NCBI GenBank assembly: GCA_002269645.1
Contig: NIVC01000436.1
Coordinates: forward strand, 124,001-188,000
Length of the DNA stretch: 64,000 bases
Source: Macrostomum lignano
Taxonomy: Eukaryota
Direction: 5' to 3'
Numbering within the stretch: position 1 is the stretch's first letter; every line of letters begins with the position of its first letter. Shown here one piece after another: positions 17,901 through 64,000 of the stretch. The position numbers and the translations under genes were made by a program. The notes beneath the pieces are model-generated. The model was not told the origin of the DNA. It did not search any database and saw only the letters and a program-made list of their open reading frames with translations.

Positions 17901-20900
17901 TCAGCGCCCAAAAATCGACCGAAAGACGCACGAAGGAGCGAGTTGGAAATCAGGTGACCAATTTGACCTTGACATGCTGCTCTTCATACTGACGCTGGCC
18001 GGTTGAATCCAGAGTTGACAAAAATAGTCAATATTTTCAGTGCAGATTAAGTCAACTTTTCAGGTGCATGCTGATTGTATAATTCAAGCGTGTGCCTAAA
18101 CTATGTGAAGGTTAGCTTGACGTTTCACCGAATGACTATCAAAAGCATTTATCAGGCAGGAGGAATATGTGAATATGATTCGCATCATTGATATTTTTAT
18201 ACTGTCGTTTCCATTTTTTGATTGGCGTAATGCAGTTTGAATTGAACTTTTCAAGCTTTTATAACAAGTAACAGCTATTCTGTAATTTATTTCACAATGT
18301 CTAACAGGTATCACTCTGTCTACCAGGTATCACCATATCCAACAGGTATCACTTGTCCAACAGGTATCTCTCTGTCTAACAGGTATCCCCATATTCAACA
18401 GGTATCACTTGTCTAACAGGTATCTCTCTGTCTAACAGGTATCACTATATCTAACAGGTATCACTATATCTAACAGGTATCACTATATCTAACAGGTATA
18501 ATCTTATCTAATAGGTATCATCTTATCTAACAGGTATCATCTTATCTAACAGGTATTCCTCTGTCTAGTAGGTAGCACCTTATCTAACACGTATCAGTTT
18601 GTCTAACAGGTATCGCTTTATCTAAAAGGTATCACCTTTTCTAACAGGTATCACCTTATCTAACAGATATCACCTTGTCTAACAGGTATCACCATATCTA
18701 ACAGGTATCACTCTGTACAACAGGTATCTTTCTGTCTAACAGGTATCACCATATCTAACAGGTATCACCTTATCTAACAGGTGTCACCTTATTTAATGTA
18801 TCACCATATCTAACAGGTATCACTCTGTCCAACAGGTATCTTTCTGTCTAACAGGTATCACCATATCTAACAGGTATCACCTTATCTAACAGGTGTCACC
18901 TTATCTAACATGTATCACCATGTCTAACAGGGATCAACCATGTCTAACGAGTATTTTTCTGTCTTATAATTATCACCATATTAATTTTGTAGCTGTAAAA
19001 ATTATTATATTATGGCATTACAAGAAAGATTTATAATATTTTATCAATCAAACCATCACTGTTTCATTTGAACAGGTGATTCACAAAGGCTTCCTGACAA
19101 TCAATAACAAGCACATCATGCGGGGCTGCTGCTGCTGGTTCGTCCTGTCGTCTGAGAGTCTCACCTGGTACGCGGATCAAGAGGTCAGTTTTGGTGCTCG
19201 CGTAATTTTTTATTAATCTCCTCTTATCTCCTCTCTTCTCTTTCCTCTTCTCTTTCCTCTTCTCTTTCCTCTTCTCTTTCCTCTCCCCTCCTCTCCTCTC
19301 CTCTCGTCTCCTCTCCTCTCGTCTCCTCTCTCCTCTCCTCTCCACTCGTCTCCTCCCCTCTTATCTCCTCTCTTCTCTCTCCTCTCCCCTCCTCTCCTCT
19401 CCTCTCTCCTCTCTCCTCTCCTCTCTCTCCTCTCCTCTCCTCTCCACTCGTCTCCTCCCCTATTATCTCCTCTCTTCTCTCTCCTCTCCCCTCCTCTCCT
19501 CTCCTCTCTCCTCTCTCCTCTCCTCTCTCTCCTCTCCTCTCCTCTCCACTCGTCTCCTCCCCTCTTATCTCCTCTCTTCTCTCTCCTCTCCTTTCCTCTC
19601 CTCTCTTCTCCTCTCCTCTCCTCTCCTCTCCTCTCCTCTCCTCTCCTCTCTCTCCTCTCCTCTCTCTCCTCTCCTCTCCTCTCCTCTCCTCTCCTCTCCT
19701 CGCCTCTCCTCTCCTCTCCTCTCCTCTCCTCTCCTCACCTCTCCTCTCCTCTTCTCTCCTCTCCTCTCTCCTCTCCTCTCCTCTCCTCTCCTCTCCTCTC
19801 CTCTCCTCTCCTCTCCTCACCTCTCCTCTCCTCTTCTCTCCTCTCCTCTCTCCTCTCTCCTCTCCTCTCCACTCGTCTCCTCCCCTCTTATCTCCTCTCT
19901 TCTCTCTCCTCTCCTTTCCTCTCCTCTCTTCTCCTCTCCTCTCCTCTCCTCTCCTCTCTCCTCTCTCCTCTCCTCTCTCCTCTCTCCTCTCCTCTCTCTC
20001 CTCTCCTCTCCTCTCCTCTCCTCTCCTCTCCTCTCCTCACCTCTCCTCTCCTCTTCTCTCCTCTCCTCTCTCCTCTCCTCTCCTCTCCTCTCCTCTCCTC
20101 TCCTCACCTCTCCTCTCCTCTCTCTCCTCTCCTCTCCTCTCCTCTCCTCACCTCTCCTCTCCTCTCCTCTCCTCTCCTCTCCTCTCCTCTCCTCTCCTCT
20201 CCTCGCCTCTCCTCTCCTCTCCTCTCCTCTCCTCTCCTCTCCTCACCTCTCCTCTCCTCTTCTCTCCTCTCCTCTCTCCTCTCCTCTCCTCTTCTCTCCT
20301 CTCCTCTCTTCTCTCTCCTCTCCCCTCCTCTCCTCTCCTCTCTCCTCTCTCCTCTCCTCTCTCTCCTCTCCTCTCCTCTCCACTCGTCTCCTCCCCTCTT
20401 ATCTCCTCTCTTCTCTCTCCTCTCCTTTCCTCTCCTCTCTTCTCCTCTCCTCTCCTCTCCTCTCCTCTCCTCTCTCCTCTCTCCTCTCATCTCTCTCCTC
20501 TCCTCTCCTCTCCTCTCCTCTCCTCTCCTCTCCTCTCCTCACCTCTCCTCTCCTCTTCTCTCCTCTCCTCTCCTCTCCACTCGTCTCCTACCCTCTTATC
20601 TCCTCTCTTCTCTCTCCTCTCCTTTCCTCTCCTCTCTTCTCCTCTCCTCTCCTCTCCTCTCCTCTCTCCTCTCCTCTCCTCTCCTCTCCTCTCCTCTCCT
20701 CTCCTCTCTCCTCTCTCCTCTCTTCTCTCTCCTCTCCTCTCCTCTCCTCTCCTCTCCTCTCCTCGCCTCTCCTCTCCTCTCCTCTCCTCTCCTCTCCTCT
20801 CCTCACCTCTCCTCTCCTCTCCTCTCCTCTCCTCACCTCTCCTCTCCTCTTCTCTCCTCTCCTCTCCTCTTCTCTCCTCTCCTCTCTCCTCTCTCCTCTC

Positions 20901-21445
20901 CTCTCTCTCCTCTCCTCTCCTCTCCTCTCCTCTCCTCTCCTCGCCTCTCCTCTCCTCTCCTCTCCTCTCCTCTCCTCACCTCTCCTCTCCTCTCCTCTCC
21001 TCTCCTCTCCTCACCTCTCCTCTCCTCTTCTCTCCTCTCCTCTCTCTTCCCCTCCTCTCCTTTCCTCTCCTCTCTTCTCCTCTCCTCTCCTCTCCTCTCC
21101 TCTTCTCTCCTCTCGTCTCGTCCCTTCTCTTATCTTCTCTTATAATCTCTTATCTTACCTCCTGTTCTTTCTTTTCATCCCCTCTTTTCTTTTTTTGTCT
21201 TCTCCACTGTCTTACCTCTCCAAATCTGCACTGCAACTCTCACAGAAATCTATAATCTCTTAGAACTAAGCGAACTATAGTTTGGAGATTGTTGCACATA
21301 AGATTGGGTACCAACTATTCAGAAAAGGCAGTTCAGTCTAAATACGGTTTCTCGTGTAGCTACGAGCTAATTTTAAGCTTTGCACTTCCGCTCAATTCTG
21401 TCTTACTTCTTTGCCAAAGGCGGCAAAGCCTAAACTAAGTCCTTT

Positions 21446-21515
<70 letters not shown>

Positions 21516-24500
21516 CACTCTACCATTTGTATTTGGAAACTATACATGCACATATTATAACTTCGCTTATAATAAACACAGCTATTATTGCATTGCCTTT
21601 GCGTTATAACAACTGAGGCTTGAATAATATTAGAGTTTCGCTACGCAGCGAAAATGAAGAATCAGAGCCTTCTAATTCTGCTGGAATCAACTGCTACATT
21701 TTAACTGCCGTCGGTTGGGTAGCGGAAGAGCAGTGAAGTTTAGAAGGTAGAGGCGGAGAGACAGACCGGAGAGAAAGGAGAGAGAAGAGGGGCGAGAGAA
21801 GAGGGGAGGGAGAAGAGAGGAGAGATGAGAGATGAGAGAGGAGAGGGGAAAGAGGAGAGAGGAGAGAGGAGTGAGGAGAGAGGAGAGAGGAGAGGGGAAA
21901 GAGGAGAGAGGAGAGAGGAGAGAAGAGAGGGGAAAGAGGAGAGAGGAGAGAGGAGTGAGGAGAGAGGAGAGAGGAGAGAGGAGAGGGGAAAGACGAGAGT
22001 GGAGAAATGAGAGAGGAGAGGGGAAAGAGGCGAGAGGAGAGAGGAGAGAGGAGAGGGGAAAGAGGAGAGAAGAGAAATGAGAGAGGAGAGATGAGAGAGG
22101 AGGGGGGAAGATGAGAGATGAGAGAGGAGAGGGGAAAGAGGAGAGAGGAGAGAGGAGTGAGGAGAGAGGAGAGAGGAGAGAGGAGAGAGGAGAGAGGAGA
22201 GAGGAGAGAGGAGAGAAGAGAGGGGAAAGAGGAGAGAGGAGAGAGGAGTGAGGAGAGAGGAGAGAGGAGAGAGGAGAGGGGAAAGACGAGAGAGGAGAAA
22301 TGAGAGAGGAGAGGGGAAAGAGGCGAGAGGAGAGAGGAGAGAGGAGAGAGGAGAGAGGAGAGAGGAGAGAGGAGAGGGGAAAGAGGAGAGAGGAGAGAGG
22401 AGAGAGGAGAGGGGAAAGAGGAGAGAGGAGAAATGAGAGAGGAGAGATGAGAGAGGAGGGGGGAAGATGAGAGATGAGAGAGGAGAGGGGAAAGAGGAGA
22501 GAAGAGAGATGAGAGAGGAGAGATGAGAGAGGAGAGGGGAAAGAGGAGAGAAGAGAGAGGACAGAGGACAGAGGGGAGAGAGGAGAGAGTAGAGAGGAGA
22601 GAAGAGACAGGAGGGAGGAGAATATAGATAAAAGAAAAGAAGAGAGAAAAGAGAGAATAGGAGCGCATCCTCTGGACGAGGAAGGCCAGAAGTGTTCCAT
22701 AGGGCAATGTCAGATACAAACGCAACGATATGAAAGGAGCAAATACACTGCTTGAGTAGATTCAAATGGTTTAAATTCTTCTGAATGCTAAACACTGAAG
22801 AAATGTAATGAAAAGTTCAGTTTTTTGTTGCTTGTTTGACAAGTATACGAAAAGTAACTAAAAACCAACTTAACTTCTAAACCGCGGCAATACAGGAGCG
22901 CCAGCAAAAGTACATGCTGCCCTTGGAAGGCCTTCGGGTTCGCGACGGCGAGAACCGATTGTTCAGCAAAAGAAGCGTCATCGTGCTCTTCAACGCTGAT
23001 GGCAGGTTGGAGCTACGATTTGCATTAAAAACTTGAATACTTCGTAGTACCAATAGAAACATCGTATTGAAAGTCATAGTGTAACTACTGTGAGTAGAAA
23101 CGGTGAAATTTAAATCTAGAAAACGTTTGAATTACCCGAACAGAAACACGTACAAAGACTGCAAGAGTCTGGAGCTTGCGGCCGAGTCAGCCGACGATGT
23201 CGACACTTGGAAGGCGGCGCTGCTTCGCGCTGGAGTTTATCCGGAGGGTGACGAGGAGGAGAAAGAGGAGGTGAGAGAAATGCAGGCAAGTGTTTGCTTT
23301 GTTACCTCACTCCGCATCCACCTCACTCCGCACATTCCTCACTCTGCAACCACCTCACTCCTCGCCCACCTCACTCCTTACCCACCTCACTCCTCGCCCA
23401 CCTCACTCCTTACCCACCTCACTCCTCACCCACCTCACTCCTTACCCACCTCACTCCTCACCCACCTCACTCCTTACCCACCTCACTCCTCACCCACCTC
23501 ACTCCTCAACCACCTCACTCCTTACCCACCTCACTCCTCACCCACCTCACTCCTCAACCACCTCACTCCTCACCCACATCACTTCTCAACCACCTCACTC
23601 CTCACCCACCTCACTCCTCGCCCACCTCGCTCCTCGCCCACCTCACTCCTCAACCACCTCACTCCTCACCCACCTCACTCCTCACCCACCTCACTCCTCG
23701 CCCACCTCGCTCCTCGCCCACCTCACTCCTCAACCACCTCACTCCGCATCCACCTCCCTCCGCACCGTACCTAATTCATTCTCCTGTCACAGAGACTACG
23801 GATATCTATGTTAATATCTACTGCCAAGAATAAAATTATTGAATCAATACAACTCTTACTCATCAAACTCGCACTCAACCAGGCTAGAAGCAGCAGTATA
23901 GAGGAGGAAACCCTGGACCCGTCGATGGAGCGTCAAGTTGAGACAATCCGGAGTTTGGCCAAATCCTACATGCGCATAGTGGACAAAGCGCAACGAGACT
24001 TTGTGCCAAAGACCATCATTCACATGGTGGTTAATGACGTACGCTTTGGGATGTGCAAATTCTTTCTTAAATATGACTAATTCTTACAATTATGTCACAG
24101 TTTAGGACGGAGGTGGGTCTGGATCTAGAATGGGTTGCTTTGAATCGAGATGAGAGCATGTGGGTGAAGAGTGAGGTGGATAATATGTGTGAAGTGGTTG
24201 AGGAATGAGGCGGGTGAGGGGTGAAGTGGGTGAGGAGTGAGGTGGTTGAGGAGTGAGGTGGTTGAGGAGTGAGGTGAGCGAGGAGTGAGGTGGGTGAGGA
24301 GTGGGTGAGTGAGGAGTGAGGTGGGTGAGGAGTGAGGTGGGTGAGTGAGGTGGGTGAGGAGGGAGGTGGTCGAGGAGTGAGGTGGTTGAAGAGTGAGGTG
24401 GTTGAGGAGTGAGGTGGTTGAGGAGTGAGGTGGTTGAAGAGTGAGGTGGTTGAGGAGTGAGGTGGTTGAAGAGTGAGGTGGTTGAGGAGTGAGGTGGTTG

Positions 24501-25177
24501 AAGAGTGAGGTGGTTGAAGAGTGAGGTGGTTGAGGAGTGAGGTGGTTGAGGAGTGAGGTGGTTGAAGAGTGAGGTGGTTGAAGAGTGAGGTGGTTGAGGA
24601 GTGAGGTGGTTGAGGAGTGAGGTGGTTGAGGAGTGGGTGAGTGAGTAGTGAGGTGGTTGAAGAGTGAGGTGATTGCAGAGAGAGTGATTCAGATGCGAGG
24701 CCAATACCCACCACAAAGGCACTGAAATAAAATCGCTCCCCTTCCGCCACAACGCAGCTGAGATCATTCCTAAAGACGTCGCTGCCAGTGCAGCTGTACA
24801 GCTGCTCCGACCAGACCAGCCTGATGGAGGAATCCGAGGCCGAGGCGACAAGACGCGTGGAAACCGCTCGAGCCTACAAGGCCACGGTGGAAGCTCTGCG
24901 AGTTCTCAGTGAAGTCGCAATCGGGGGCTACGGCGCTAGCAGCGGCGTCGGATTCTCGTCGGGAGCTTCAACATCAGCGACAACGTCGACAGTGTCATCC
25001 GTTGGCGCGCCGCAGAGACCGCCGCCGGCGCCGCCATCGACGCGCAAATTGTCGCCGGTGCCGCAGGCGCCGCCACCAGCGCTGCCATCGCGGCCGCCAC
25101 CGAACGTCACCGCGGCTGCCCTGGCCTCCGTGGCCGCCGCCACCGCCACTTCCGGCAGCTCGTCGGTGGTTCAGTGA
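11925..25177 (+). CDS. DNM: Classical dynamin GTPase (G domain, middle/stalk, PH, GED, short PRD), 820 aa, 13 exons
   Basis: Exons: 11925-12088, 12244-12317, 12393-12733, 13396-13811, 15100-15232, 16241-16308, 17174-17470, 17905-17953, 19076-19183, 22896-23005, 23144-23270, 23883-24038, 24758-25177 (sum 2463 nt, frame closed). Motifs: [51 protein letters not shown] domain [42 protein letters not shown] at 25492. Confidence 0.96.
13150..13375. repeat. 25-bp minisatellite (ATTCTTAGAATCCCATTCCCACCAT), dynamin intron 3
   Basis: Period of 25 read directly (13201, 13226). Confidence 0.92.
13840..15000. repeat. 42/43-bp minisatellite (ATATCCCAGATTTAGAATCCCTACACCCTA...), dynamin intron 4
   Basis: About 27 near-identical units. 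Confidence 0.96.
15275..15570 (-). mobile_element. tRNA-derived SINE with CORE-like central domain
   Basis: On the minus strand: GGGGTTGTAGCCTAGTGG (A box), GGTTCGATTCCC (B box), then GTGTCCTTGAGCAAAACAATTAACTC...CAGTTCACCCAGATGTAAAATTGG (resembles the MIR/CORE consensus), a 3' tail and an A-rich end. A second truncated copy lies at 11268. Confidence 0.85.
15685..15825. repeat. 24-bp array (TTCTGGCGCCAATTTGAAACCAGA), dynamin intron 5
   Basis: About 6 units, plus remnants near 15900-15955. Confidence 0.8.
16645..17170. repeat. 17/18-bp telomere-like minisatellite (CCCCAAACCCTAACCCA), dynamin intron 6
   Basis: Each unit contains CCCTAA. The array runs to within a few nt of the 3' splice site at 17173. 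Confidence 0.9.
17495..17850. repeat. 11/22-bp array (AATCTACCTGTAATCTACTNAC), dynamin intron 7
   Basis: Direct reading. Confidence 0.9.
18300..18950. repeat. 20-bp array (TCTAACAGGTATCACCNTA), dynamin intron 8
   Basis: About 30 diverged units. Confidence 0.9.
19220..21120. repeat. (CTCTC/CTC)n polypyrimidine satellite, dynamin intron 9
   Basis: Direct reading, with a recurring higher-order CCACTCGTCTCCTCCCCTCTTATC block. A pure (CT)n run follows at 21447-21510. Confidence 0.96.
21765..22625. repeat. (GAGGAGA)n polypurine satellite, dynamin intron 9, inverted relative to 19220-21120
   Basis: Direct reading. Confidence 0.95.
23305..23762. repeat. (CACCTCACTCCT)n-type array, dynamin intron 11
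   Basis: Units ccacctcactcct(ca/ta/cg)c. Confidence 0.93.
24165..24680. repeat. (AGGAGTGAGGTG)n-type array, dynamin intron 12; reverse complement of the intron 11 array
   Basis: Units gaggagtgaggtggtt. Confidence 0.93.
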
Positions 25178-30079: not shown

Positions 30080-30805
30080 CCCCGTTCTATCAGAGACAGT
30101 TGCTATAATTTTTTCAAAATTTAATATTCATCAAAAAGACTGTTTAAATCTGTTGAGATATCCATCTACACGTGTAAGTAGTCTAATTTTTAGTCCAATA
30201 ACGACTATCCAGAGGTCTTTGGTTCGCGGCTTCTCTCACTGTTAATTCTATTTCTTTGTATATTATTGTTATTAACATTATGGTGGTCCTTGAATTGCTG
30301 CACAAGCAATGTCTAACACTGCGGTTCTATAATTGCAATGCACATTATCATACGTGTTTACTCTAAATACATTTTTTCTTCTCTCTAAATGGTCGGGTGA
30401 GAGAGAGAAACTTTCGCTTTCTTGCATACATGTAGGGTAGAGGCATTGTGAATCTAACAAAAGCACAGAGAGAGGCATTGGCTTGCGTGTCAAGTAGAGT
30501 GTTCTGTTAACGATTAAGAAAAGAGAGGAATGGAGTGACAACCATGAGGCTCGCAAGTAGCCTTCAAGGGACTTCATTGAAAGCGAATGCAAATTCTCGT
30601 GGGCGTTATCTTCGTTGACAGCATTTTCCTATATTTTTATAAGCCTGTTCTATCTATAGGGCATGGAGTTCTAGCATGTAGAGAGCATCTGGTAGGAAAT
30701 CTTTTGCATTATTCCATGGGCCTAGGATTGTATGTAACTCTTGGAACTTTTTGTTTGAAAAATTAATAGACTTCTCTTCTTACCATTTTTATTTTCATTG
30801 TTAAC

Positions 30806-31167
30806 CTCTGGTGCTGGCGCCTCTGGTGCTGGCGCCTCTGGTGCTGGCGCCTCTGGTGCTGGCGCCTCTGGTGCTGGCGCCTCTGGTGCTGGCGCCTCTG
30901 GTGCTGGCGCCTCTGGTGCTGGCGCCTCTGGTGCTGGCGCCTCTGGTGCTGGCGCCTCTGGTGCTGGCGCCTCTGGTGCTGGCGCCTCTCGTGCTGGCGC
31001 CTCTGGTGCTGGCGCCTCTGGTGCTGGCGCCTCTGGTGCTGGCGCCTCTGGTGCTGGCGCCTCTGGTGCTGGCGCCTCTGGTGCTGGCGCCTCTGGTGCT
31101 GGCGCCTCTGGTGCTGGCGCCTCTGGTGCTGGCGCCTCTGGTGCTGGCGCCTCTGGTGCTGGCGCCC
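30806..31167. repeat. Near-perfect 15-bp array (CTCTGGTGCTGGCGC), about 24 copies
   Basis: One variant unit (ctctcgtg) near 30990. Followed by four looser CCCTCAC units. Confidence 0.97.
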
Positions 31168-31840: not shown

Positions 31841-34800
31841 ATGCCGAATCAACAATCAGTTTTTAAGCCTCTTCATCCTCATCTGTTGCTGCTGCTTATT
31901 CTGACCCTGCTATTGTCGGGTCAGCCGCAACCGGTTAACGCCTGCTTCAGCCAGTCGCACCTGTACCAGCCGAGAGAATCCTCCAACAGGCAGCGCTCCA
32001 GTCACTCCTTCGCATTCGGAGAATATCAACCGAAGACCTCCGAGTTGGCGGTTCAGGCCAGCGGGCCAGAGGGGGCCCCGGTGAGACAGTCGCGACATCT
32101 GCTGAGATCCCGATCTGATTTGCTGGAGTTCAACGGCAGGCGCAGGTCGCGGTACATGACTCGGGTGAGCTGGATTGGCTTTGCTGGGGGTCTGCAGGTA
32201 TTGATCTATAGGTAGGGATCTACAGGTAGGGATCTACAGGTAGGGATCTACAGGTAGGTATCTACAGGTAGGGATCTACAAGTAGGGATCTACAGGTAGG
32301 AATCTACAGGTAGGGATCTAGAAGTATTGATTTGCAGGTGGAGACCTATGGGTAGGGATCTAAAAGTAGAGATCTACAGATAGGGATCTACTGGTAAAAA
32401 TCTTCAGGTAGAGATCTGTAGCTAGGGATCTAAAGTCACGGATCTACAGGTAAAGGTAAGGATCTACCGGTAGAGATTTGAAATTAGAGATCTGCAGGTA
32501 GGAATCTACTGGTAGGAGGGATCTACAGGTAGAAATGTACAGGTAGGGATCTACAGGTAGGGATCTACAGGTAGGGATCTACAGGTAGGGATCTACAGGT
32601 AGGGATCTACAGGTAGGGATCTACAGGTAGGAATCTACAGGTAGGGATCTGCAGGTAGGGATCTACAGGTAGGAATCTACAGGTAGGGATCTACAGGTAG
32701 GGATCTACAGGTAGGGATCTACAGGTAGGGATCTACAGGTAGGAATCTACAGGTAGGGATCTACAGGTAGGGATCTACAGGTAGGGATCTACAGGTAGGG
32801 ATCTACAGGTAGGGATCTACAGGTAGGAATCTACAGGTAGGGATCTACAGGTAGGGATCTACAGGTAGGGATCTACAGGTAGGGATCTACAGGTAGGAAT
32901 CTACAGGTAGGGATCTACAGGTAGGGATCTACAGTTAGAGATCTACAGGTGGGGATCTACAGGTAGGGATCTACTATAAGCCCACTATAAGCCTACTACA
33001 AGCCTGCGGTAATGGCTAATCAGACTCACTAACAGCACAACTGTCTTCTCACAACGCAGCGCTGCAAAGAGAAGCTGGAGCAATTGGCCCTGCTAGTTCG
33101 CAACCAATGGAATGGTCACGTTCGCATCCGGGTTCACCACGCCTGGATGCCGAAGCACGACGCCTATTGGGACAGCCAAGTCGGCCACCGCGGCCTCGAG
33201 TCTTTGCACTTTTCTGGCCGAGCAGTGGACATGTCTCTGCTGAAATTGAAACCCAATCTGAATTATCGAGACGTAACCTTGGGTCGATTGGCCCAACTGG
33301 CTTACTATCAGGCCTATTTCGACTATTGCAAAGTTTTAAAGGACACTGTGCACTGTTCAGTGAAGTCCGGTGAGCGTTTCAATAATTCAAGTTTAATTGC
33401 ATCATAGATACTGAGGCAGCGATGATTATCCAAGATTTTAGTTGCATCTTATAGTGACTGAGGCAGCGATGATTATCCAAGATTTTAGTTGCATCTTAGT
33501 GACTGAGGCAGCGATGATTATCCAAGATTTTAGTTGCATCTTATAGTGACTGAGGCAGCGATGACTATCCAAGATTTTAGTTGCATCTTAATGACTGAGG
33601 CAGCGATGATTATCCAAGATTTTAGTTGCATCTTAATGACTGAGGCAGCGATGACTATCCAAGATTTTAGTTGCATCTTAATGACTGAGGCAGCGATGAC
33701 TATCCAAGATTTTAGTTGCATCTTAATGACTGAGGCAGCGATGATTATCCAAGATTTTAGTTGCATCTTAATGACTGAGGCAGCGATGACTATCCAAGAT
33801 TTTAGTTGCATCTTATAGTGACTGAGGCAGCGATGATTATCCAAGATTTTAGTTGCATCTTATAATGACTGAGGCAGCGATGATTATCCAAGATTTTAGT
33901 TGCATCTTATAATGACTGAGGCAGCGATGATTATCCAAGATTTTAGTTGCATCTTATAGTGACTGAGGCAGCGATGATTATCCAAGATTTTAGTTGCATC
34001 TTATAGTGACTGAGGCAGCGATGATTATCCAAGATTTTAGTTGCATCTTAATGACTGAGGCAGCGATGACTATCCAAGATTTTAGTTGCATCTTATAGTG
34101 ACTGAGGCAGCGATGATTATCCAAGATTTTAGTTGCATCTTATAGTGACTGAGGCAGCGATGATTATCCAAGATTTTAGTTGCATCTTATAGTGACTGAG
34201 GCAGCGATGATTATCCAAGATTTTAGTTGCATCTTATAGTGACTGAGGCAGCGATGATTATCCAAGATTTTAGTTGCATCTTAATGACTGAGGCAGCGAT
34301 GATTATCCAAGATTTTAGTTGCATCTTAATGACTGAGGCAGCGATGACTATCCAAGATTTTAGTTGCATCTTAATGACTGAGGCAGCGATGACTATCCAA
34401 GATTTTAGTTGCATCTTAATGACTGAGGCAGCGATGATTATCCAAGATTTTAGTTGCATCTTATAGTGACTGAGGCAGCGATGATTATCCAAGATTTTAG
34501 TTGCATCTTATAATGACTGAGGCAGCGATGATTATCCAAGATTTTAGTTGCATCTTATAATGACTGAGGCAGCGATGATTATCCAAGATTTTAGTTGCAT
34601 CTTATAGTGACTGAGGCAGCGATGATTATCCAAGATTTTAGTTGCATCTTATAGTGACTGAGGCAGCGATGATTATCCAAGATTTTAGTTGCATCTTAAT
34701 GACTGAGGCAGCGATGACTATCCAAGATTTTAGTTGCATCTTAATGACTGAGGCAGCGATGATTATCCAAGATTTTAGTTGCATCTTATAGTGACTGAGG

Positions 34801-36368
34801 CAGCGATGATTATCCAAGATTTTAGTTGCATCTTATAGTGACTGAGGCAGCGATGATTATCCAAGATTTTAGTTGCATCTTAATGACTGAGGCAGCGATG
34901 ATTATCCAAGATTTTAGTTGCATCTTAATGACTGAGGCAGCGATGACTATCCAAGATTTTAGTTGCATCTTAATGACTGAGGCAGCGATGACTATCCAAG
35001 ATTTTAGTTGCATCTTAATGACTGAGGCAGCGATGACTATCCAAGATTTTAGTTGCATCTTATAGTGACTGAGGCAGCGATGATTATCCAAGATTTTAGT
35101 TGCATCTTATAGTGACTGAGGCAGCGATGATTATCCAAGATTTTAGTTGCATCTTAATGACTGAGGCAGCGATGACTATCCAAGATTTTAGTTGCATCTT
35201 AATGACTGAGGCAGCGATGATTATCCAAGATTTTAGTTGCATCTTATAGTGACTGAGGCAGCGATGATTATCCAAGATTTTAGTTGCATCTTATAGTGAC
35301 TGAGGCAGCGATGATTATCCAAGATTTTAGTTGCATCTTATAGTGACTGAGGCAGCGATGATTATCCAAGATTTTAGTTGCATCTTATAGTGACTGAGGC
35401 AGCGATGATTATCCAAGATTTTAGTTGCATCTTATAGTGACTGAGGCAGCGATGATTATCCAAGATTTTAGTTGCATCTTATAGTGACTGAGGCAGCGAT
35501 GATTATCCAAGATTTTAGTTGCATCTTATAGTGACTGAGGCAGCGATGATTATCCAAGATATTAGCCACATCTTAGTGACTGAGGCAGCGATGACTATCC
35601 AAGATTTTGTGCTGGTAGACTGACAATATATCAGTAGACAATTATCGATAGAAACACTCGCACCCCACCTCACCAGACGATCCCATGGACTCGGACTGGC
35701 TCGCCTGTTTTCCTTCCAAGGCGACGGTTGTCAAGCGTCACCATGGCAACAGTGGCAACCACAACAACAGCAACAACGCAGTGGTTGCAATTGACACCCT
35801 AACACCGGGAGATGAAATTCTTACTCTGGACGAGCTGACAGGAAAGCAGGTGTTCACCAGAGTTCTCGGTTATCACCATAAACTCGGAGACAGCGAGGCA
35901 ACCTATCTGAAGATCCAATTAGCCAACGGACATCAGCTGGAGGTGTCACCCAATCATCTGGTCTTCTCCACTTCGGCAACGTCGCTAAAAATTCGACCAA
36001 CCTACGCTGCCGACTTATCGATCGGCGATCGTTTGATGACGCCGCAATCGTCTGACGGAGGCTGGACGGGAGTAGTGAAAATTTCCGTGAGACATCGTCG
36101 AGGTCGGTACGCTCCGATGACGTCGGCTGGTCACCTGCTGGTTAACGGAGTCTGGGTGTCCAGCTACGCGCACACTCGTCATCAAGCCGCTGCTCATGTC
36201 CTGTTTGCTCCTCTGAGATGGTTGGATTTCCTTTGTAGCAGCGGCGGCAGGTTCTGCAACTCGATGACGTCAGATGCGTACGATAGAGACGGAGTGCACT
36301 GGTATTCGGGGTGGCTGCATCGAGCTGCTCAACTCATGGCTCCCGGTAGCGTTCTGTTTCCCAACTAA
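31841..36368 (+). CDS. hh: Divergent Hedgehog precursor (signal peptide, Hedge signalling domain, Hint/Hog autoprocessing domain with SRR), 441 aa, 3 exons
   Basis: Exons 31841-32164, 33060-33369, 35677-36368 (1326 nt). Hydrophobic leader then VNA|CFSQ. Hedge motifs: ASGPEG, YMTR|RCKEKL, ESLHFSGRAVD, LGRLAQLA, FDY, VHCSVKS. Hint: A|CFPSKATV, LTPGDEI, VSPNHLVF, GRYAPMTSAGHLLVNGVWVSSYA. SRR: AHVLFAPLR, GVHWYS. Both introns sit at the positions (MT.|RCK and SVK.|) known from vertebrate Hh genes. Confidence 0.92.
32205..32975. repeat. 14-bp minisatellite (GGGATCTACAGGTA), hedgehog intron 1
   Basis: Direct reading; degenerate in the 5' half, near-perfect in the 3' half. Confidence 0.95.
33410..35610. 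repeat. 45/47-bp minisatellite (GACTGAGGCAGCGATGATTATCCAAGATTTTAGTTGCATCTT[AAT/ATAGT]), hedgehog intron 2
   Basis: About 47 near-identical units filling almost the whole intron. Confidence 0.98.
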
Positions 36369-44559: not shown

Positions 44560-46420
44560 ATTTCCGGCACCGTGGATTGCGGCCCACCGAATGACACCGA
44601 TAGCTCCAGAAGTGCCAGCTCACGCCCACGGACATATGGAATCTCTGCCGCTGGACGGGACAGTGGACCGCTTCTGCTCCGTCACTTTCAAGGCGGCTCA
44701 GGGGGCCTGCCGCCGTACCCCATTCTGGAACAAAGGGTGTATGTACCAAGGCCTCCAGAAAAGTCCAAGAAGCTCGGTCAGCGGCCGATTCCCTGAAAAC
44801 CCCGGCGGCCCTGACCGCTTTCAACCGCACTCGCCGTGACCCCGCCGCCATCATCAGTCCGGCCCAGGGTACCAGACCAGCGTGTGTGTGCAACACAGAC
44901 AAGGAAGAAGTCAACCTCTTCTGCCAGCTATATCTCCCGGGTATCTCCCGGGTATCTCCCGGGTATCTCCCGGGTCGACCTGTAATGGTTTTATTCCTTG
45001 CCTTATTGGCGGGAACTGTTATCATCCAGACTTATGACAAAAATGTTGCTAAATAATTGTATCGCTTTTAATGTACATTCGCTCTCTCTATGTACATTGT
45101 TGACTTGCATAAATATAGCCAGCGCTGCCTCACTGGGGCCTTCGTTGATTTTTACACTGCCAAATACCGCGCGTTACAGACCGGAGCCCGGAGGACTCGG
45201 ATCTCCGCGAAACCCCCAGCGAAGCCGCCGCTATAGCGAATCCGAACCGCCCCTCACCACGCAAGAGCTGCGCACCGCCATCCGAAACCTGAAGTCTGGA
45301 ACAACGGCAGGACCAAGGAAATATTGAAGCGCCTCCGGCCCGAATGGACCTTCCACTCCCGTCACTGAATAACCTCGCCTGAAAGGAGGGCGCCATCCCG
45401 TCCAGCTGGCGTCTGGCCGTCATCATCCCGATCCCGAAGAAGGAGAAGGACCCGAAGGTGCCCAGCAGCTACCGCCCAGTGGCCCTTTCCAGCAACGTTG
45501 CCAAGGCTCTGCTAGACTTCAGCCGGGCGTACGACAGAGTCTGGCGCTTGGCCCTGTACGCTAAGCTGCTGCGCCTGGGGGTTGGCCGCCGACTTGTCCG
45601 GTCCGCGGCTTCCTCTGGCAGCGCCGGGCCAGAGTCCGCTGGAACGCCGCCGCCAGCCGGGAACGCTGCTTCCGCGAAAGACTCCCGCAGGGAAGTGTCA
45701 TCGCCCCGAAGCTCTGTATCGAATGTCTATGTCAATGACCTCGCTGTCAGCTAACCTTCGCCCAACATGCCGCAGACTTGAGACGTCGCATGGACGCGAC
45801 TGGGATACCTTCGCCTCGCCCTTCGCCTCGCTTCGCCTCCTGGTTGAGCGTCAGCAGAACTGCTGTGCCAGGGCGATCACCGGTCGCATTCAGCCCACCA
45901 CCATCCGGGAGCTCCTCGCCACTGCGGATCTGCCGCCGCTGGGCCACCTCTTCATGGAAATAAAGAGCGGCCACCCTTCACGAGAAGTCGCTCAGGCTCC
46001 TGTCGGACACTCCAGCCCCACTAATCGGCAAGCAGAACCTGTCAACCACGCCTCAAATCTGGCTCCGTGAGCACCATGAGACTGAGGACGGCATCCCGGA
46101 CAGCTGCCGACAGAAGCGCACGATTGAATTCATCAATAACCGTGACGCAAGAGACATCAATGTCTGGACTGACGGCAGCGCTACCGACGGCTGCCGCAAC
46201 AGACGAGGGGCCACGGTAATCACGACTCGCCGCTGGGGACAGGTCCTCACAGCGGCTGCGGGGGCCATCTGCAGCAGCACCACAGCTGGGCTGACGGCCA
46301 TCGCCCTGGGCATCGGGCAGTGCAGCTCCCTCCTGCTCTGCCACGGCCAGTCAATCGACATCTTCACGGACAGCATGGCGGCGGTCCAGATCCTGTCGCG
46401 CTCAGCCGGCCAGAGGGCGA
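44560..46420 (+). mobile_element. Decayed non-LTR retrotransposon of I/ingi type: RT plus RNase H
   Basis: Frameshifted RT pieces: PLTTQELRTAIRNLKSG, SWRLAVIIPIPKKEKDP..SSYRPVALSS, LDFSRAYDRVW, a GLPQGSV-like segment and YVND. RNase H from 46153: VWTDGS...CSSTTAGLTAI...IFTDS. An AT-rich insertion lies at about 44980-45165. Confidence 0.85.
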
Positions 46421-46479
46421 CTCCGTGGCGCGGCCAGGTGCCTGTTGTCCCCAGTCCCTGCTATTTCAACTATGGATCC

Positions 46480-48774
46480 GCCGGGTTGCGCCGGGGACCA
46501 TGAGGACAACCTCCATCTTGCCCCAGCTGTACCAGGTGGCCGCCTCAGACTCGGCACGATGAACTGCCGAACTCTGAAGGCCCCATGGCGTCACGCTGCA
46601 GGAGGTTTCTATCGTGGCTGAGCCGGGGCTCCACTCTGAAGACCTCGGAGCCGGCTGGAGCCTCCTGTACACGTCGGCAGATAACCACGGCCGGGTGGTG
46701 TCGGCGTGCTGATCGGACCGCGGCTCTACAGAGCGTGCATTGCATCTCGCTGTCCCCGCGACTGATTCGGGTCGACCTGCGACTGCGCACACGCTGCATC
46801 CGGCTGTTCTGCGCTTAATGCACCCACCGCTGCTCACCCCGAGGAGGCTCGTGCCTTCTTTGACTTCCTGGCTGGGCAGCTGGAAGAGGTGCCAAACCGC
46901 GACACGCTGGCAGTGCTCGGAGACCTGAACGCAGTCTCGCGGAGGTTCGAGCGCTCGCCCTTTGTCTCCGCTGGCTCTCCGGTCAGACCACGAACTCCTG
47001 ATCTGCGAATTGCGTCTCCGCGACCAGCTCTACCGACCGCCAAAGCAGCGGCCACGGCGATACTATCGCGCACTGTTGGACACTTGCGGGAAGCGTCAAT
47101 TCGCGGGTGCCACGCGCCTGCGTCGCCGCTGCCTGCCAGTTTTGCGACCCCACTGGACACGACGCTCCCAGCTGGGGACTTCTGCACCAGCCCAGTCACC
47201 ACGGAGGACGTTGTGCTGTTCGCTCGGAAAACACCCGGCGGCAAGGCGCTCGGCCCCGACGAAGTTCCGGTCGAAGCGCTGCGGCTCCGCTGTGTGGCCT
47301 CCCAGGTCACAGGCGTCATGAAACGCGTGCGCGCTGGCGCTCCTGCGCCAACCGAGTGGACTGTCGCGCACATCGTGCCGATACCGAAGAAGGCAGGGAC
47401 AATCCGGAAAGAAGACCACCGCGGGATCTCGCTGATGTCCTGCACCGCGAAGCTCTTCAACCGGCTGCTGCTCGATCGTCTGCAGTCGGTGCTGGACCCG
47501 TACCTTCGGTACGAGCAGAACGGATTCCGGCCGCAACGCGTTACAGTCACACAGATCCTTGCACTCCGCCGTGTCATCGAGGAGGCGCGTATCCGCCAGT
47601 CTACGCTGATCATTGTCTTCGTTGCCTTTCGAAAGGCGTTTGACTCGGTGCTGAGAGCCGCGCTCCCTTTCGTCCTTCGAGCCTACCGGGTCCCACACCA
47701 GCTAATCGACGCTATCATGTCGCTGTAGCGCGATACTCAAGCTGCTGTGGTGATAGCGGACGGCCTGTCAGACCTGTTCGATACTTCATCAGGAGTTCTG
47801 CAGGGCGACACGCTAGCGCTGTTTCTCTTCGTGCTGCTGCTGGACTGGATGCTTCGGACCGCACTCCCCTCGGCTAATGACGGCTTCCTGCTGCTCAGAC
47901 GCATCGGTCGCCGCCACGGCGAAAAGCGCCTAAGCGTACTTGGCTACGCCGATGACCTCGCCCTCCTGTCTTCATCCATTGAAGGCGAACAGCGCCAGAT
48001 CGACAGGCTGGTCGAGGTGGCATCGAGCGTTGGTCTGATCGTCAACACGTTAAAGACCGAGGTGCTGACTGTGCCGGCCGACATTTCAGCGGACCTGACG
48101 TGCCGCGGCGCAGACGGCCAGACGACCAAGCTCGCACGCTGCCAGAGGTTCAGAGGCTCGGCGGTCTGGTGCCCCACGTGGAAGAGGACCTCCGGCGGCG
48201 CAGATGACTTGCCTGGGCGGCCTTTCGTTCGATCCGAGCCGTCATCCTGTCTGAAGCGCTGCCCGACCGCCTAAGAGGGCTCGGCTGTGGCAGGCGGTGG
48301 TCGAAACCGTCCTGCTATACAACGCCGAGACGTGGACGCTGACGGCCACGCTAGAGCGGCAGCGGACTCGGCGCACTCAGGGCTGCTCCATGCGGCCTTG
48401 CGAGCTGACGAGAGCGTCGGGACCGAGGGCGTAGGGACCGAGGCCTTGTACGATCGGGCCAAGCTGCCGCGCCCGTCCTCCATACTGCGCCGGCGACGAC
48501 TTCAACTGGCGGGCCACGTGATCCGGGCCGAGGGCTACTGCCGCCAACCTGTTCAGGACGTCCTGCTGCTCACCTTGCAGGGTCCGTTAAGGCGGGGTCA
48601 GGCCCGAACCCGTCGATACGTGGACTGCCTCCTATGCGACGCTGGGGCGCCCGACACTGCCAACAAAGCGGACTTTCTTCGCTCCTAAGCTCTGCGGCGC
48701 GCCATCTGACGTGGCTTGCTTTAAATGTGACCTTGCTTGCAGGGCCGCGTATTTTGTTGTTGTTGTTGTTGTTG
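46480..48774 (+). mobile_element. RTE-clade non-LTR retrotransposon (APE endonuclease plus RT), frameshifted, with (TTG)n tail
   Basis: APE motifs: LGTMNCRTL, LQEV, GGVGVLI, LGDLNA, RSDHEL. RT motifs: ALGPDEVP, IVPIPKK, RGISLM, EQNGFRP, FRKAFDSV, GVLQGDTLA, GYADDLAL. (TTG)n tail at 48754-48774. Confidence 0.9.
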
Positions 48775-63100: not shown

Positions 63101-64000
63101 AATGGATTAGTGTCTGATAATGGATTAGTGTCTGGTAATGGATTAGTGTCTGGTAATGAATTAGTGTCTGATAATGGATTAGTGTCTGATAATGGATTAG
63201 TGTCTAGTAATGGATTAGTGTCTGATAATGGATTAGTGTCTGATAATGGATTAGTGTCTAGTAATGGATTAGTGTGTAGTAATGGATTAGTGTCTAGTAA
63301 TGGATTAGTGTCAGATGATGGATTAGTGTCTGGTAATGAATAAGTGTGATATTTTATTATTTGGCGTCGTGATTTAGTTAGGAATTGTTTGAGATAGATT
63401 TTTGTCAGATGTATTATAGTATTGCTGTCTTTGCAGTATCTTATTCTGCCAAATTTGTACCACTTCACAGCCATCCAAGCGAGTCTACGTGACACCCTCT
63501 CGGGTTGAAGAGCTGCACAGGTGCTACTGGCACGAGGGCAAGGTGAAAAAAGTTATCCCTGTCACTTTCCAGAATCCCAATTCTATTGGTTAGAATTCCA
63601 ATACCATACATTAGAATCCCAATCCCATAGATTAGAATCCCAATCCGATACATTAGAATTCCAATCCCATAGATTAGAATTCCAATCCCATAGATTAGAA
63701 TTCCAATCCCATAGATTAGAATCCCAATCCGATACATTAGAATCCCAATCCCATACATTAGAATCTCAATCCCATAGATAGAATCCCAATCCCATAGATT
63801 AGAATCCCAATTCCATAGATTAGAATCCCAATCCCAGACATTAGAATCCCAATCCCATAGATTGAGTTCGAAATCCCCAAAATCGCATCTACATCACAAG
63901 CCCCGCATCAACACCCGAACCACAGGTGATGTCGGAACTTCCCAATCTGGAGTCCATCCGAGAGCACGCCGCCGCTTCCCTTGTGACTCTGCGCACGGAT
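51119..64000 (+). CDS. NAPRT: Nicotinate phosphoribosyltransferase (3' end beyond the window)
   Basis: Exons 51119-51155, 51256-51426, 52038-52689, 54896-55036, 55600-55954, 63471-63542, 63926-(64000); all GT-AG with consistent phases. Motifs: [95 protein letters not shown]. Confidence 0.96.
51545..51915. repeat. 16-bp array with alternating A/B variants (GAGCTTATCAATTATC / GAGCTTATCAATTGTT), NAPRT intron 2
   Basis: Direct reading; mostly a 32-bp dimer. Confidence 0.93.
52775..53620. repeat. 20-bp purine array (GGGAGAGTGAGAGGGAGATG), NAPRT intron 3, split by ~135 bp of unique DNA
   Basis: Direct reading; interruption at about 53262-53400. Confidence 0.92.
55105..55590. repeat. 29-bp array (AATCCCATT[C/G]AGCTACAACAGAAATCCCA), NAPRT intron 4
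   Basis: Period of 29 (55441, 55470); ends at the 3' splice region. Confidence 0.93.
55967..63341. repeat. 7.4-kb 18-bp minisatellite (GATAATGGATTAGTGTCT), about 410 units, NAPRT intron 5
   Basis: Phase-perfect 18-mer with a small set of substitution variants and no indels seen. Confidence 0.99.
63580..63865. repeat. 21-bp array (TTAGAATCCCAATCCCATAGA), NAPRT intron 6
   Basis: About 13 copies. Confidence 0.92.

What the first reader, a model, noticed from the sequence alone, without database searches (positions are those of the whole stretch)
31841..33369. Hedgehog signalling domain with Zn site kept but Ca-binding site erased and charge-reversed
Seen: the mature N-terminus is CFSQ (Cys at 31943) rather than CGPG, with no KRRxxK heparan-binding cluster. 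The loop equivalent to IFKDEENTGADRLMT reads LEFNGRRRSRYMT, RVTEGWDED reads RVHHAWMPK, and the YYES Glu is absent. The Zn ligands (SLH, RAVD, VHCS) remain. Established: the acidic Ca site mediates binding to Patched, CDON/BOC, GAS1 and HHIP, while N-terminal palmitoyl-Cys engages Patched separately. Inference: a non-canonical Hh paralogue that may use only the palmitate interface, a different receptor, or act as an antagonist.
Basis: partly seen in the sequence, partly recalled or inferred. Interest (0 to 1): 0.72.

Follow-up and report, generated by a model that had tools for sequence, protein, structure and literature searches.

The report
Flatworm hedgehog gene lacking calcium site
This is the ordinary hedgehog gene of the flatworm Macrostomum lignano. 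Its signalling domain does lack the calcium-binding site, but every flatworm hedgehog examined lacks it too, including the working planarian one, so it is a trait of the phylum and not a rogue extra copy.

Summary
Window 31841-36368 (+) holds a three-exon gene. Its 441-aa product is identical to the annotated Macrostomum lignano "Hedgehog protein". It has a signal peptide, a mature Cys35 (CFSQ), an HH_signal domain and a Hint/sterol-recognition domain.

- **Sites:** The Zn triad is kept (H158, D165, H206). At most one of the six Ca ligands survives under any alignment. The peptidase-like residues (E177, H135, H181 of Shh) are gone. Ca loop 1 is Arg-rich (GRRRSRYMTRR).
- **Interpretation only partly supported:** This is not an extra paralogue.
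  - It shares indels and motifs with planarian, monogenean, trematode and cestode Hh. It groups with them at 89% bootstrap.
  - Both intron positions and phases match frog Shh.
  - All those flatworm proteins also lack the Ca site.
  - Smed-hh, the single planarian hh, works genetically with ptc, smo and gli.
- **Selection:** Two genomic copies differ at five sites, all synonymous.
- **Best reading:** This is the flatworm hh orthologue, a lipidated ligand that binds its receptor without Ca. The extreme basic loop is specific to M. lignano among the sequences sampled.
- **Novelty and limits:** Novelty is modest. The gene is known, but I found no paper describing loss of the Ca site across flatworms. 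A second, canonical hh in M. lignano could not be strictly excluded.

The parts
31841..32164 (+). Exon 1 (108 codons, ends in phase 0 after ...SRYMTR). It encodes the signal peptide, the mature N-terminus and the first half of the Hedge domain, including Ca loop 1.
   Evidence: The spliced product equals P0001. The donor is CGG|GTGAGC. The intron position and phase are the same as in frog Shh.
31841..31942 (+). Signal peptide, residues 1-34 (MPNQQSVFKPLHPHLLLLLILTLLLSGQPQPVNA)
   Evidence: Read from the sequence: a Leu-rich core followed by V-x-A before Cys35. AF2 predicts a helix at residues 13-25. No signal-peptide predictor was run.
31943..31945 (+). Cys35 codon (TGC). This is the predicted mature N-terminal Cys and the presumed palmitoylation site. 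Its context is CFSQSH, not CGPGRG.
   Evidence: Whether it is palmitoylated was not tested.
32129..32164 (+). Degenerate Ca loop 1: F97-NGRRRSRYMT-R108. It replaces FKDEENTGADRLMTQ and has net charge +6.
32165..33059 (+). Intron 1. It contains a 14-bp tandem array (GGGATCTACAGGTA, about 55 copies) at 32187-32974.
33060..33369 (+). Exon 2 (310 nt, ends in phase 1 after HCSVKS). It encodes the rest of the Hedge domain.
   Evidence: In frog Shh, exon 2 is 262 nt with identical boundaries and phases.
33129..33209 (+). Degenerate Ca loop 2: RVHHAW-MPKHDAYW-DSQVGHRGLESLH (residues 132-158). It has an 8-residue insertion after the conserved Trp. E127 is replaced by His, and D130 and D132 are not conserved.
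   Evidence: The AF2 confidence is low here (pLDDT about 51-64).
33207..33209 (+). Zn ligand His158 (equivalent to Shh H141)
   Evidence: Invariant column
33228..33230 (+). Zn ligand Asp165 (equivalent to Shh D148)
   Evidence: Invariant column
33351..33353 (+). Zn ligand His206 (equivalent to Shh H183), in the motif TVHCSVK
   Evidence: Invariant column
33370..35676 (+). Intron 2. It contains a 47-bp tandem array (about 48 copies, 97% matches) at 33392-35608. The acceptor is ...CCCCACCTCACCAG|AC.
35677..36368 (+). Exon 3. It encodes the linker, the autoprocessing site A221|C222-F-P, the Hint module and the C-terminal sterol-recognition region (GVHWYS). The stop codon TAA is at 36366-36368.
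   Evidence: Foldseek matches Drosophila Hh-C entries 1at0 and 6tyy with TM 0.90-0.91.
35706..35708 (+). Cys222 codon, the catalytic nucleophile of autoprocessing. The residue before it is Ala instead of Gly.
   Evidence: Cys is invariant. The metagenomic relative P0143 also has ACF.
35955..35957 (+). His305 of the (T/S)xxH motif of the Hint module (SPNH)
   Evidence: Invariant column

Best explanation
This is the Macrostomum lignano orthologue of the flatworm hedgehog (hh) gene.

**Inferred mechanism, from family knowledge.** The precursor enters the secretory pathway. Its Hint/sterol-recognition domain cleaves it at A221|C222 and attaches cholesterol. The signalling domain starting at Cys35 is released as the ligand.

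**Shown here.** That domain keeps the Hedgehog fold and the structural Zn site. It has lost the two-calcium site and the peptidase-like residues. All sampled flatworms of the Rhabditophora share this state (Macrostomorpha, Tricladida, Monogenea, Trematoda, Cestoda). It is therefore most likely ancestral to that clade.

**Inferred function.** The planarian protein of the same type is the only hh ligand there and works genetically with ptc, smo and gli. The most likely mechanism is therefore canonical Patched-dependent signalling in which receptor contact does not need Ca. Contact would rely on the N-terminal or lipid interface and the Zn-centred groove.

The Arg-rich replacement of loop 1 and the loss of the N-terminal basic motif are M. 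lignano-specific elaborations on this phylum-wide background.
For: - **Gene model and identity:** The 441-aa product is 100% identical to annotated P0001 from M. lignano. Pfam HH_signal and Hint both score well above their cutoffs.
- **Fold:** AF2 gives mean pLDDT 79. Foldseek TM scores are 0.75-0.80 to Shh, Ihh, Dhh and fly HhN, and 0.90 to Hh-C.
- **Gene structure:** Intron positions and phases are identical to frog Shh.
- **Shared flatworm features:** Indels and motifs are shared with Schmidtea, Cichlidogyrus, Schistosoma, Clonorchis, Sparganum and Echinococcus Hh. The NJ flatworm clade has 89% bootstrap, with M. lignano and the unidentified metagenomic P0143 branching first, as the species tree predicts for Macrostomorpha.
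- **Ca and Zn sites:** Ca ligands are missing in all of these proteins while the Zn triad is HDH in all.
- **Functional comparator:** P0149 is Smed-hh, ACZ64510. [quoted passage not shown]
- **Purifying selection:** Two loci in GCA_002269645.1 encode the identical protein. They have five synonymous and no nonsynonymous differences (P about 8e-4 under uniform neutrality). CDS identity is 99.6%, against 92-98% in the flanks and introns.
- **Pathway partner:** Smoothened is reported present in most flatworm species (bioRxiv 10.64898/2026.07.29.741434).
Against: - No expression or functional data for the M. lignano gene were found.
- The flatworm sequences are long branches, so the NJ grouping could be inflated by attraction. 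The shared indels argue against that.
- The CFSQSH N-terminus has no basic residue near the Cys. Other flatworms have C-x-K/R-S. Palmitoylation is therefore uncertain.
- The -1 residue at the cleavage site is Ala, not Gly. Efficient autoprocessing is assumed, not shown.
- A second, canonical hh in M. lignano could not be strictly excluded. The searches list only the best 120-150 hits, or cluster sequences at 50% identity.
Confidence: 0.8

Rival explanations
1. One reading: this is an additional, non-canonical Hh paralogue that coexists with a canonical hh. It would act through a different receptor or as an antagonist.
For: - The domain is very divergent, only 30-34% identical to canonical Hh.
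- Ca-poor paralogues do exist beside canonical ones elsewhere. A Nematostella Hh cluster (P0150, P0286) reads DKNRDG, and hagfish P0254 reads EKVKVD.
- The searches cannot exclude a hidden canonical copy.
Against: - It is orthologous by indels, tree and intron positions to the sole hh of other flatworms (PMC5153250).
- Only P0001 and its mis-modelled twin P0002 come from M. lignano among the hits of three searches.
- It retains the Hint/sterol-recognition domain, the N-terminal Cys and the Zn site. That is the full ligand architecture.
Confidence: 0.06
2. The gene is retained but has left the canonical pathway, working independently of Smo or even Ptc. This would resemble the nematode Hh-related proteins, with the Hedge domain repurposed, for example as a matrix or glycosaminoglycan-binding factor.
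For: - Smoothened is reported missing in the congener M. cliftonense and in Stenostomum. Pathway erosion therefore occurs near this lineage.
- M. lignano has the most altered N-terminus and the most basic loop 1 among the flatworms compared.
- E177, H135 and H181 are lost.
Against: - The same preprint states that Smo is a single orthologue in most flatworm species. The passage read names Stenostomum and M. cliftonense as the exceptions and does not mention M. lignano.
- The planarian protein with the same site losses signals with ptc, smo and gli.
- The Zn groove and Cys35 are conserved.
Confidence: 0.1
3. It is a decaying or neutrally drifting copy, an incipient pseudogene, and the site losses are simply degeneration.
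For: There is no expression evidence. The gene lies in very repeat-rich DNA, with minisatellites in both introns.
Against: - The reading frame and consensus splice sites are intact in both genomic copies.
- There are 0 nonsynonymous against 5 synonymous differences, and the CDS is far more conserved than the flanks.
- All Hint catalytic positions and the Zn triad are kept.
- The same 'losses' are conserved across the phylum.
Confidence: 0.03

Closest known systems
Planarian Hedgehog (Smed-hh, ACZ64510 / UniProt D2ILR9 = P0149; also Dugesia Djhh)
   Same: - Hedge plus Hog architecture.
- N-terminal Cys not followed by GPG.
- Shortened loop 1 without the D96 equivalent.
- Non-acidic residues and an insertion after the conserved Trp.
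- GR(A/G)(V/I)DMSL and LAQLA(Y/L)YxAxFD(W/Y)C motifs.
- Zn triad kept, E177 lost.
   Different: - Only about 27-29% identical overall.
- Smed-hh has CVKS, GCF and KENARWMT. M. lignano has CFSQ, ACF and the Arg-rich GRRRSRYMT.
- Function is demonstrated for Smed-hh only.
Neodermatan Hh (Schistosoma, Clonorchis, Echinococcus, Sparganum; P0025, P0146, P0086, P0004)
   Same: The same flatworm-type motifs and the same loss of D96, E127, D130, D132 and E177, with the Zn triad kept.
   Different: - They keep an EE pair in loop 1 (SEEARWMT).
- They carry a 200-300-residue insertion exactly where M. lignano has 8 extra residues.
- Their cleavage site is GCF.
Vertebrate Sonic, Indian and Desert hedgehog N-domain (PDB 1vhh, 3d1m, 2wfx, 6e1h)
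   Same: - Fold (TM 0.75-0.80).
- Zn triad.
- Three-exon structure with identical intron positions and phases.
- Hint/sterol-recognition domain.
   Different: - The six Ca ligands used in binding CDON/BOC, HHIP, GAS1 and one PTCH1 interface are absent.
- No CGPG and no Cardin-Weintraub motif.
- E177, H135 and H181 are absent.
- 16 extra codons in exon 2.
Drosophila melanogaster Hh
   Same: A Hh ligand that has lost one of the two metal centres yet still signals.
   Different: It is the mirror image. Drosophilid Hh lost the Zn motif (H-x6-T, H-x-Y, E177V; PMC6027127). According to the structural literature (my knowledge, not tested here) it keeps the Ca-site residues. The flatworm proteins keep Zn and lose Ca.
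Ca-poor Hh proteins outside flatworms: a Nematostella Hh cluster (P0150, P0286), tardigrade Hh (P0195), hagfish Hh (P0254)
   Same: They have two or fewer acidic residues at the six Ca positions with the Zn triad intact.
   Different: They keep the CGPG N-terminus and lack the flatworm-type indels. These are independent events. They were not studied further here.

Membership tests
Hedgehog ligand family (Hedge + Hog precursor) | N-terminal HH_signal (Hedge) domain | tested here: met
   Pfam PF01085 scores 73.1 bits against a cutoff of 22.1, over residues 48-208. phmmer to Ihh, Shh, Dhh and fly Hh structures gives E about 1e-13. Foldseek TM is 0.75-0.80.
Hedgehog ligand family (Hedge + Hog precursor) | C-terminal Hint module with a catalytic Cys at the cleavage site, a (T/S)xxH His and a sterol-recognition tail | tested here: met
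   Pfam PF01079 scores 127 bits against a cutoff of 29.7. C222, H305 and the GVHWYS motif are present. Foldseek to 1at0 and 6tyy gives TM 0.90-0.91. The -1 residue is Ala, not Gly. The general-base position is His, as in several natural Hh proteins and in the engineered D46H mutant of PDB 6tyy.
Hedgehog ligand family (Hedge + Hog precursor) | Signal peptide followed directly by the Cys that becomes the palmitoylated N-terminus | tested here: inconclusive
   The signal-like segment and Cys35 are present. The CFSQSH context lacks the GPG and the nearby basic residue of canonical substrates. No predictor or assay was available.
Hedgehog ligand family (Hedge + Hog precursor) | Conserved three-exon structure (intron after MTQ/R in phase 0; intron after HCSVKx in phase 1) | tested here: met
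   Window exons were compared with frog Shh exons mapped on L004.
Hh/DD-peptidase-type metal centre (Roelink 2018) | Zn coordination motif H-x6-D ... H-x-H, where the second His of H-x-H is the ligand | tested here: met
   The ligands H158, D165 and H206 are conserved. The first His of H-x-H (H181) is Thr.
Hh/DD-peptidase-type metal centre (Roelink 2018) | Catalytic Glu (E177) and guardian His (H135) | tested here: not met
   E177 aligns to Val, Cys or a gap, and H135 aligns to Arg. A peptidase-like activity is therefore not expected.
Canonical Ca-binding Hh signalling domain | Six acidic Ca ligands (E90, E91, D96, E127, D130, D132) | tested here: not met
   0-1 of 6 are acidic under three independent alignments. 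The loops carry net +6 and 0 charge, against -1 and -5 in SHH.
Flatworm-type hedgehog (orthologue of Smed-hh) | Shared derived indels and motifs, and monophyly with other platyhelminth Hh | tested here: met
   Alignments. The NJ bootstrap is 89%. Caveat: these are long branches and the method is a distance method.
Flatworm-type hedgehog (orthologue of Smed-hh) | It is the only hh gene of the genome, apart from whole-genome-duplication copies | tested here: inconclusive
   Only P0001 (two loci) and the mis-modelled P0002 were recovered from M. lignano. No tool could scan the whole M. lignano genome.
Flatworm-type hedgehog (orthologue of Smed-hh) | Signals through Patched, Smoothened and Gli | not testable with these tools
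   This is known for planarians (PMC5153250). No data were found for M. lignano.

The most novel reading that the evidence does not exclude
Rhabditophoran flatworms as a whole may have rewired Hedgehog reception. The Ca-dependent surface serves CDON/BOC, HHIP, GAS1 and one of the two PTCH1 contacts in vertebrates. In flatworms it was abandoned before the group diversified and became a free, fast-evolving loop region, with 8 to about 300 inserted residues. In M. lignano, loop 1 (GRRRSRYMTRR, net +6) may have been converted into a new basic patch. It could act as a relocated glycosaminoglycan or co-receptor site that compensates for the lost N-terminal Cardin-Weintraub motif. It also fits a minimal R-x-x-R convertase motif. 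Flatworm Hh would then be a natural 'Ca-free' ligand. It could be used to separate the contributions of the lipid/N-terminal interface and the metal interface to Patched inhibition.
Probability: 0.25. Interest if true: 0.6.

Novelty: new variant of a known kind. Interest (0 to 1): 0.4.

Why it matters
Structural work on vertebrate Hedgehog makes the Ca site central to binding of co-receptors, antagonists and one Patched interface. One review states that the Ca- and Zn-coordinating residues are conserved in Hh proteins, with Drosophilids as the outlier (PMC6027127).

The data here show a whole phylum, including a species with a functionally validated hh-ptc pathway, that keeps the Zn centre and lacks the Ca centre and the catalytic Glu. 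This is the reciprocal of the Drosophila case. It suggests that neither metal centre is individually indispensable for signalling through Patched.

It also offers a natural system for asking what the Ca site is for. M. lignano is transgenic-capable and planarians are RNAi-amenable.

For genome annotation the message is simpler. This is the standard hh gene of M. lignano, present as two near-identical copies.

Tried and rejected
- **Profile search with trimmed flatworm HhN domains.** It returned only 22 neodermatan fragments and no new free-living flatworms.
- **Third protein search with a profile of free-living flatworm sequences.** It added no further Macrostomum or other free-living flatworm sequences.
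- **Metagenome contig scan with the same profile.** 92 pattern matches, none confirmed.
- **hmmalign of neodermatan proteins carrying their 200-300-residue insertions.** Loop-2 columns were fragmentary, so those rows were judged from MAFFT alignments with the insertion trimmed.
- **Biopython BLOSUM bootstrap.** It timed out and was replaced by a Kimura-distance NJ with 300 replicates.
- **Literature.** Nothing was found on M. lignano hh expression or on Ca-site loss in flatworm Hh. Rink 2009 and Yazawa 2009 are not held.
- **Alternative splice junction considered and rejected.** A donor at 33359|GT with an acceptor at 35651 in phase 0 would give HCS|KHSHPTS.... The 33369/35677 junction has the strong polypyrimidine acceptor, reproduces the annotated protein exactly, and matches the conserved phase-1 position.
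- **Residue-level placement of the basic loop.** This could not be examined because model coordinates are not returned.
Full report
**What is there**

- Exon 1 runs 31841-32164 (ATG to ...CGG|GTGAGC).
- Exon 2 runs 33060-33369.
- Exon 3 runs 35677-36368, with stop TAA.

The spliced product is 441 aa. It is identical over its whole length to a deposited Macrostomum lignano protein, P0001 (BOX15_Mlig003939g1; UniRef name 'Hedgehog protein'). The window is therefore M. lignano genomic DNA, and it equals contig NIVC01000436.1 of GCA_002269645.1.

Pfam finds HH_signal over residues 48-208 (73 bits, cutoff 22.1). It finds the Hint module over residues 221-433 (127 bits, cutoff 29.7).

An AlphaFold2 model built on 47 aligned Hh proteins has mean pLDDT 79. 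Its two halves match solved Hh-N structures (Shh, Ihh, Dhh, fly Hh; TM 0.75-0.80) and the fly Hh-C autoprocessing domain (1at0, 6tyy; TM 0.90-0.91).

Both introns sit at exactly the positions and phases found in frog Shh. One falls after MT(Q/R) in phase 0, the other after HCSVK(A/S) in phase 1. Exon 2 is 310 nt against 262 nt in frog.

**Checking the observation**

- A Leu-rich signal segment ending VNA precedes Cys35 (TGC at 31943-31945).
- The mature end reads CFSQSHLYQPRESSNRQR, without CGPG and without a basic Cardin-Weintraub cluster.

I use mouse Shh numbering below. Roelink's papers give the Ca ligands as E90, E91, D96, E127, D130 and D132. They give the Zn ligands as H141, D148 and H183, and the catalytic-type residues as E177, H135 and H181 (PMC6027127 and PMC8052667).

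| Site | Result in M. lignano |
|---|---|
| Zn triad | Kept as H158, D165, H206 |
| Ca ligands, MAFFT | R, R, gap, H, S, V |
| Ca ligands, hmmalign to a profile of 121 canonical domains | gap, gap, S, H, H, D |
| Ca ligands, phmmer against Ihh | At best D146 = D130 |
| E177, H135, H181 | All replaced |

At most one of the six Ca ligands survives whichever alignment is used.

The two loops that build the Ca site carry net charges of -1 and -5 in human SHH. They carry +6 and 0 here.

This is unusual for the family. Among 178 Hedge domains with complete alignments, 134 have all six acidic residues and only 10 have two or fewer.

**What it is**

The key result is that this is not an odd extra copy. 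An exhaustive HMMER search of 1.84 billion cluster representatives returned flatworm Hh proteins as the nearest relatives. They are:
- an unnamed metagenomic sequence (P0143, 47% identical);
- trematode Hh (Dicrocoelium, Calicophoron, Clonorchis, Schistosoma);
- Schmidtea mediterranea Hh (P0149 = ACZ64510);
- the monogenean Cichlidogyrus Hh (P0267).

All share derived features with the M. lignano protein and differ from canonical Hh.
- Loop 1 is shortened (xxARWMT / GRRRSRYMT against DEENTGADRLMT).
- There is one extra residue before the RV strand.
- Non-acidic residues and an insertion follow the conserved Trp (W-MPK-HDAY, W-QKPPAAY, W-NPRNF...). The insertion is 8 residues in M. lignano and 200-300 in Neodermata.
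- They share GRAVDM, an insertion in the following loop, LAQLAYYxAxFDWC, and loss of the YYES Glu.

All of them keep the Zn triad and lack most or all Ca ligands.

A neighbour-joining tree (Kimura distances, 300 bootstraps) recovers a flatworm clade that includes M. lignano at 89%. M. lignano and the unidentified P0143 branch first, as the species tree predicts for Macrostomorpha. Long-branch attraction is a caveat. The shared indels are independent of it.

Smed-hh is described as the single planarian hedgehog ligand. It acts together with ptc, smo and gli-1 (PMC5153250).

No other M. lignano Hedge-domain protein appeared in three searches, apart from P0002. P0002 is a mis-modelled version of the same gene. 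Its N-terminus translates the 15-bp array upstream of the ATG.

**Is it functional?**

The assembly holds two loci encoding the identical 441-aa protein (the window, and L002 on NIVC01000173.1). These are probably the duplicated regions of this hidden-tetraploid genome.
- Their coding sequences differ at five positions, all third-codon and synonymous. With 316 synonymous and 1007 nonsynonymous sites, that has a probability of about 8e-4 under uniform neutrality.
- The CDS is 99.6% identical, against 92-98% for alignable intron and flank segments.
- Splice sites, the catalytic Cys222, the SPNH His305 and the GVHWYS sterol-recognition motif are all intact.

Two deviations in the autoprocessing part deserve mention.
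- The residue before the cleavage Cys is Ala, not Gly. P0143 also has Ala there.
- The general-base position is His, not Asp. His occurs naturally at that position in several other Hh proteins in the alignment. It is also the engineered D46H mutant crystallised as 6tyy.

I found no expression or knock-down data for the M. lignano gene.

**How it most likely works**

*Shown here:* architecture, fold, retained Zn site, lost Ca site, orthology with flatworm hh, and purifying selection.

*Inferred from the family:* secretion, Hint-mediated cleavage with cholesterol addition, and N-terminal acylation.

*Inferred from the planarian comparator:* signalling through Patched, Smoothened and Gli.

Reception therefore cannot depend on the Ca-mediated surface. 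The remaining candidates are the N-terminal/lipid interface and the Zn-centred groove.

Loss of E177 and H135 argues that any peptidase-like activity is gone and that the Zn is structural or used for binding.

Within this background, M. lignano is the extreme case.
- Neodermata still keep an EE pair in loop 1.
- Planarian and P0143 have a mixed loop.
- M. lignano has five Arg in six residues. It also lacks even the single basic residue that follows the N-terminal Cys in other flatworms.

**Rivals**

| Rival | My confidence | Main point |
|---|---|---|
| Extra paralogue or antagonist | about 0.06 | Contradicted by the orthology evidence, but not strictly excluded because no whole-genome scan was possible |
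| Shift to a non-canonical, Smo-independent role | about 0.1 | Smoothened is reported missing in M. cliftonense and Stenostomum but present in most flatworms |
| Decaying copy | about 0.03 | Contradicted by the substitution pattern and the conserved catalytic positions |

**Comparison with what is known**

The closest known protein is planarian Smed-hh.

Drosophila Hh is the instructive mirror image. Drosophilids lost the Zn motif and E177 (PMC6027127), while flatworms lost the Ca site and E177 but kept Zn.

That review presents the Ca motif as conserved among Hh proteins and singles out Drosophilids as the outlier. It does not mention flatworms, and I found no paper that describes their Ca-site loss.

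Independent Ca-poor Hh proteins exist in Nematostella, a tardigrade and hagfish.

**Verdict**

The gene itself is already annotated. What may be new is the phylum-wide pattern and the Arg-rich loop specific to M. lignano.

I rate it a new variant of a known kind, with moderate interest (0.4).

Noticed in passing
window 32187-32974 (hh intron 1): This is a 14-bp minisatellite, GGGATCTACAGGTA, in about 55 copies. Every unit contains a donor-like CAG|GTA and an acceptor-like CTACAG. The intron therefore holds dozens of decoy splice-site motifs between the real sites.
   Followed up: no
window 33392-35608 (hh intron 2), and L002 11392-11893: This is a 47-bp array of about 48 copies at 97% identity, and it fills most of intron 2. 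The second genomic copy of the gene spans 2585 bp instead of 4528 bp, largely because its intronic arrays are shorter. The exons differ at only 5 synonymous sites.
   Followed up: partly
window 30805-31166: This is a 15-bp array (CCTCTGGTGCTGGCG, 24 copies, 99% matches) about 675 bp upstream of the hh ATG, open in several frames. The UniRef entry A0A1I8FC53 (P0002) translates it as LVLAP/WCWR repeats and fuses it to hh exons. That gene model is an artefact.
   Followed up: partly
window 55972-63347: This is an 18-bp minisatellite (TAATGGATTAGTGTCTGG, about 410 copies, 7.4 kb). It creates a 2611-codon open frame of GLVS(D/S)N repeats directly after a NAPRTase_C-matching exon. It is most likely intronic, and the open frame is a by-product of the period being a multiple of three.
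   Followed up: no
window 51225-55970 (+): These are exons of a nicotinate phosphoribosyltransferase gene. NAPRTase_N matches at 51225-51449 and 51962-52690, and NAPRTase_C near 55640-55970.
   Followed up: partly
window about 45000-48700 (+): This is a degenerate retroelement. The RVT_1 reverse-transcriptase domain is split over two ORFs (46766-47725 and 47729-48271) by a stop codon. It lies between hh and NAPRT.
   Followed up: partly
window 12431-25177 (+): This is a dynamin gene upstream of hh. Dynamin_N and Dynamin_M exons were confirmed by Pfam, and the annotated product is 830 aa. The same dynamin-hh order is found at the second locus L002, so the duplication covers at least these two genes.
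   Followed up: partly
whole window: Tandem-repeat density is extraordinary. TRF reports 35 rows with score of 300 or more, with periods from 2 to 132 bp, in nearly every intron and intergenic stretch.
   Followed up: no
P0147 / P0296 (Polyangiaceae / Myxococcales MAG proteins, 1127 aa): A bacterial protein with two tandem Hedge-like domains scored among the best non-flatworm matches to the M. lignano Hedge domain (E 1.3e-14). One domain reads FKDEEGTGADRMMT ... TEAWDED with an intact Ca-type motif. This is an example of the bacterial Hh-like peptidase domains discussed by Roelink.
   Followed up: no
P0143 = L003 (JGI sample 3300019149, 1091-bp contig): This is the nearest relative of the M. 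lignano protein outside the species (47% identity). It is an intron-less environmental sequence of unknown organism. It also has the ACF cleavage site and no acidic Ca ligands. It is probably a transcript from an unsampled free-living flatworm.
   Followed up: partly
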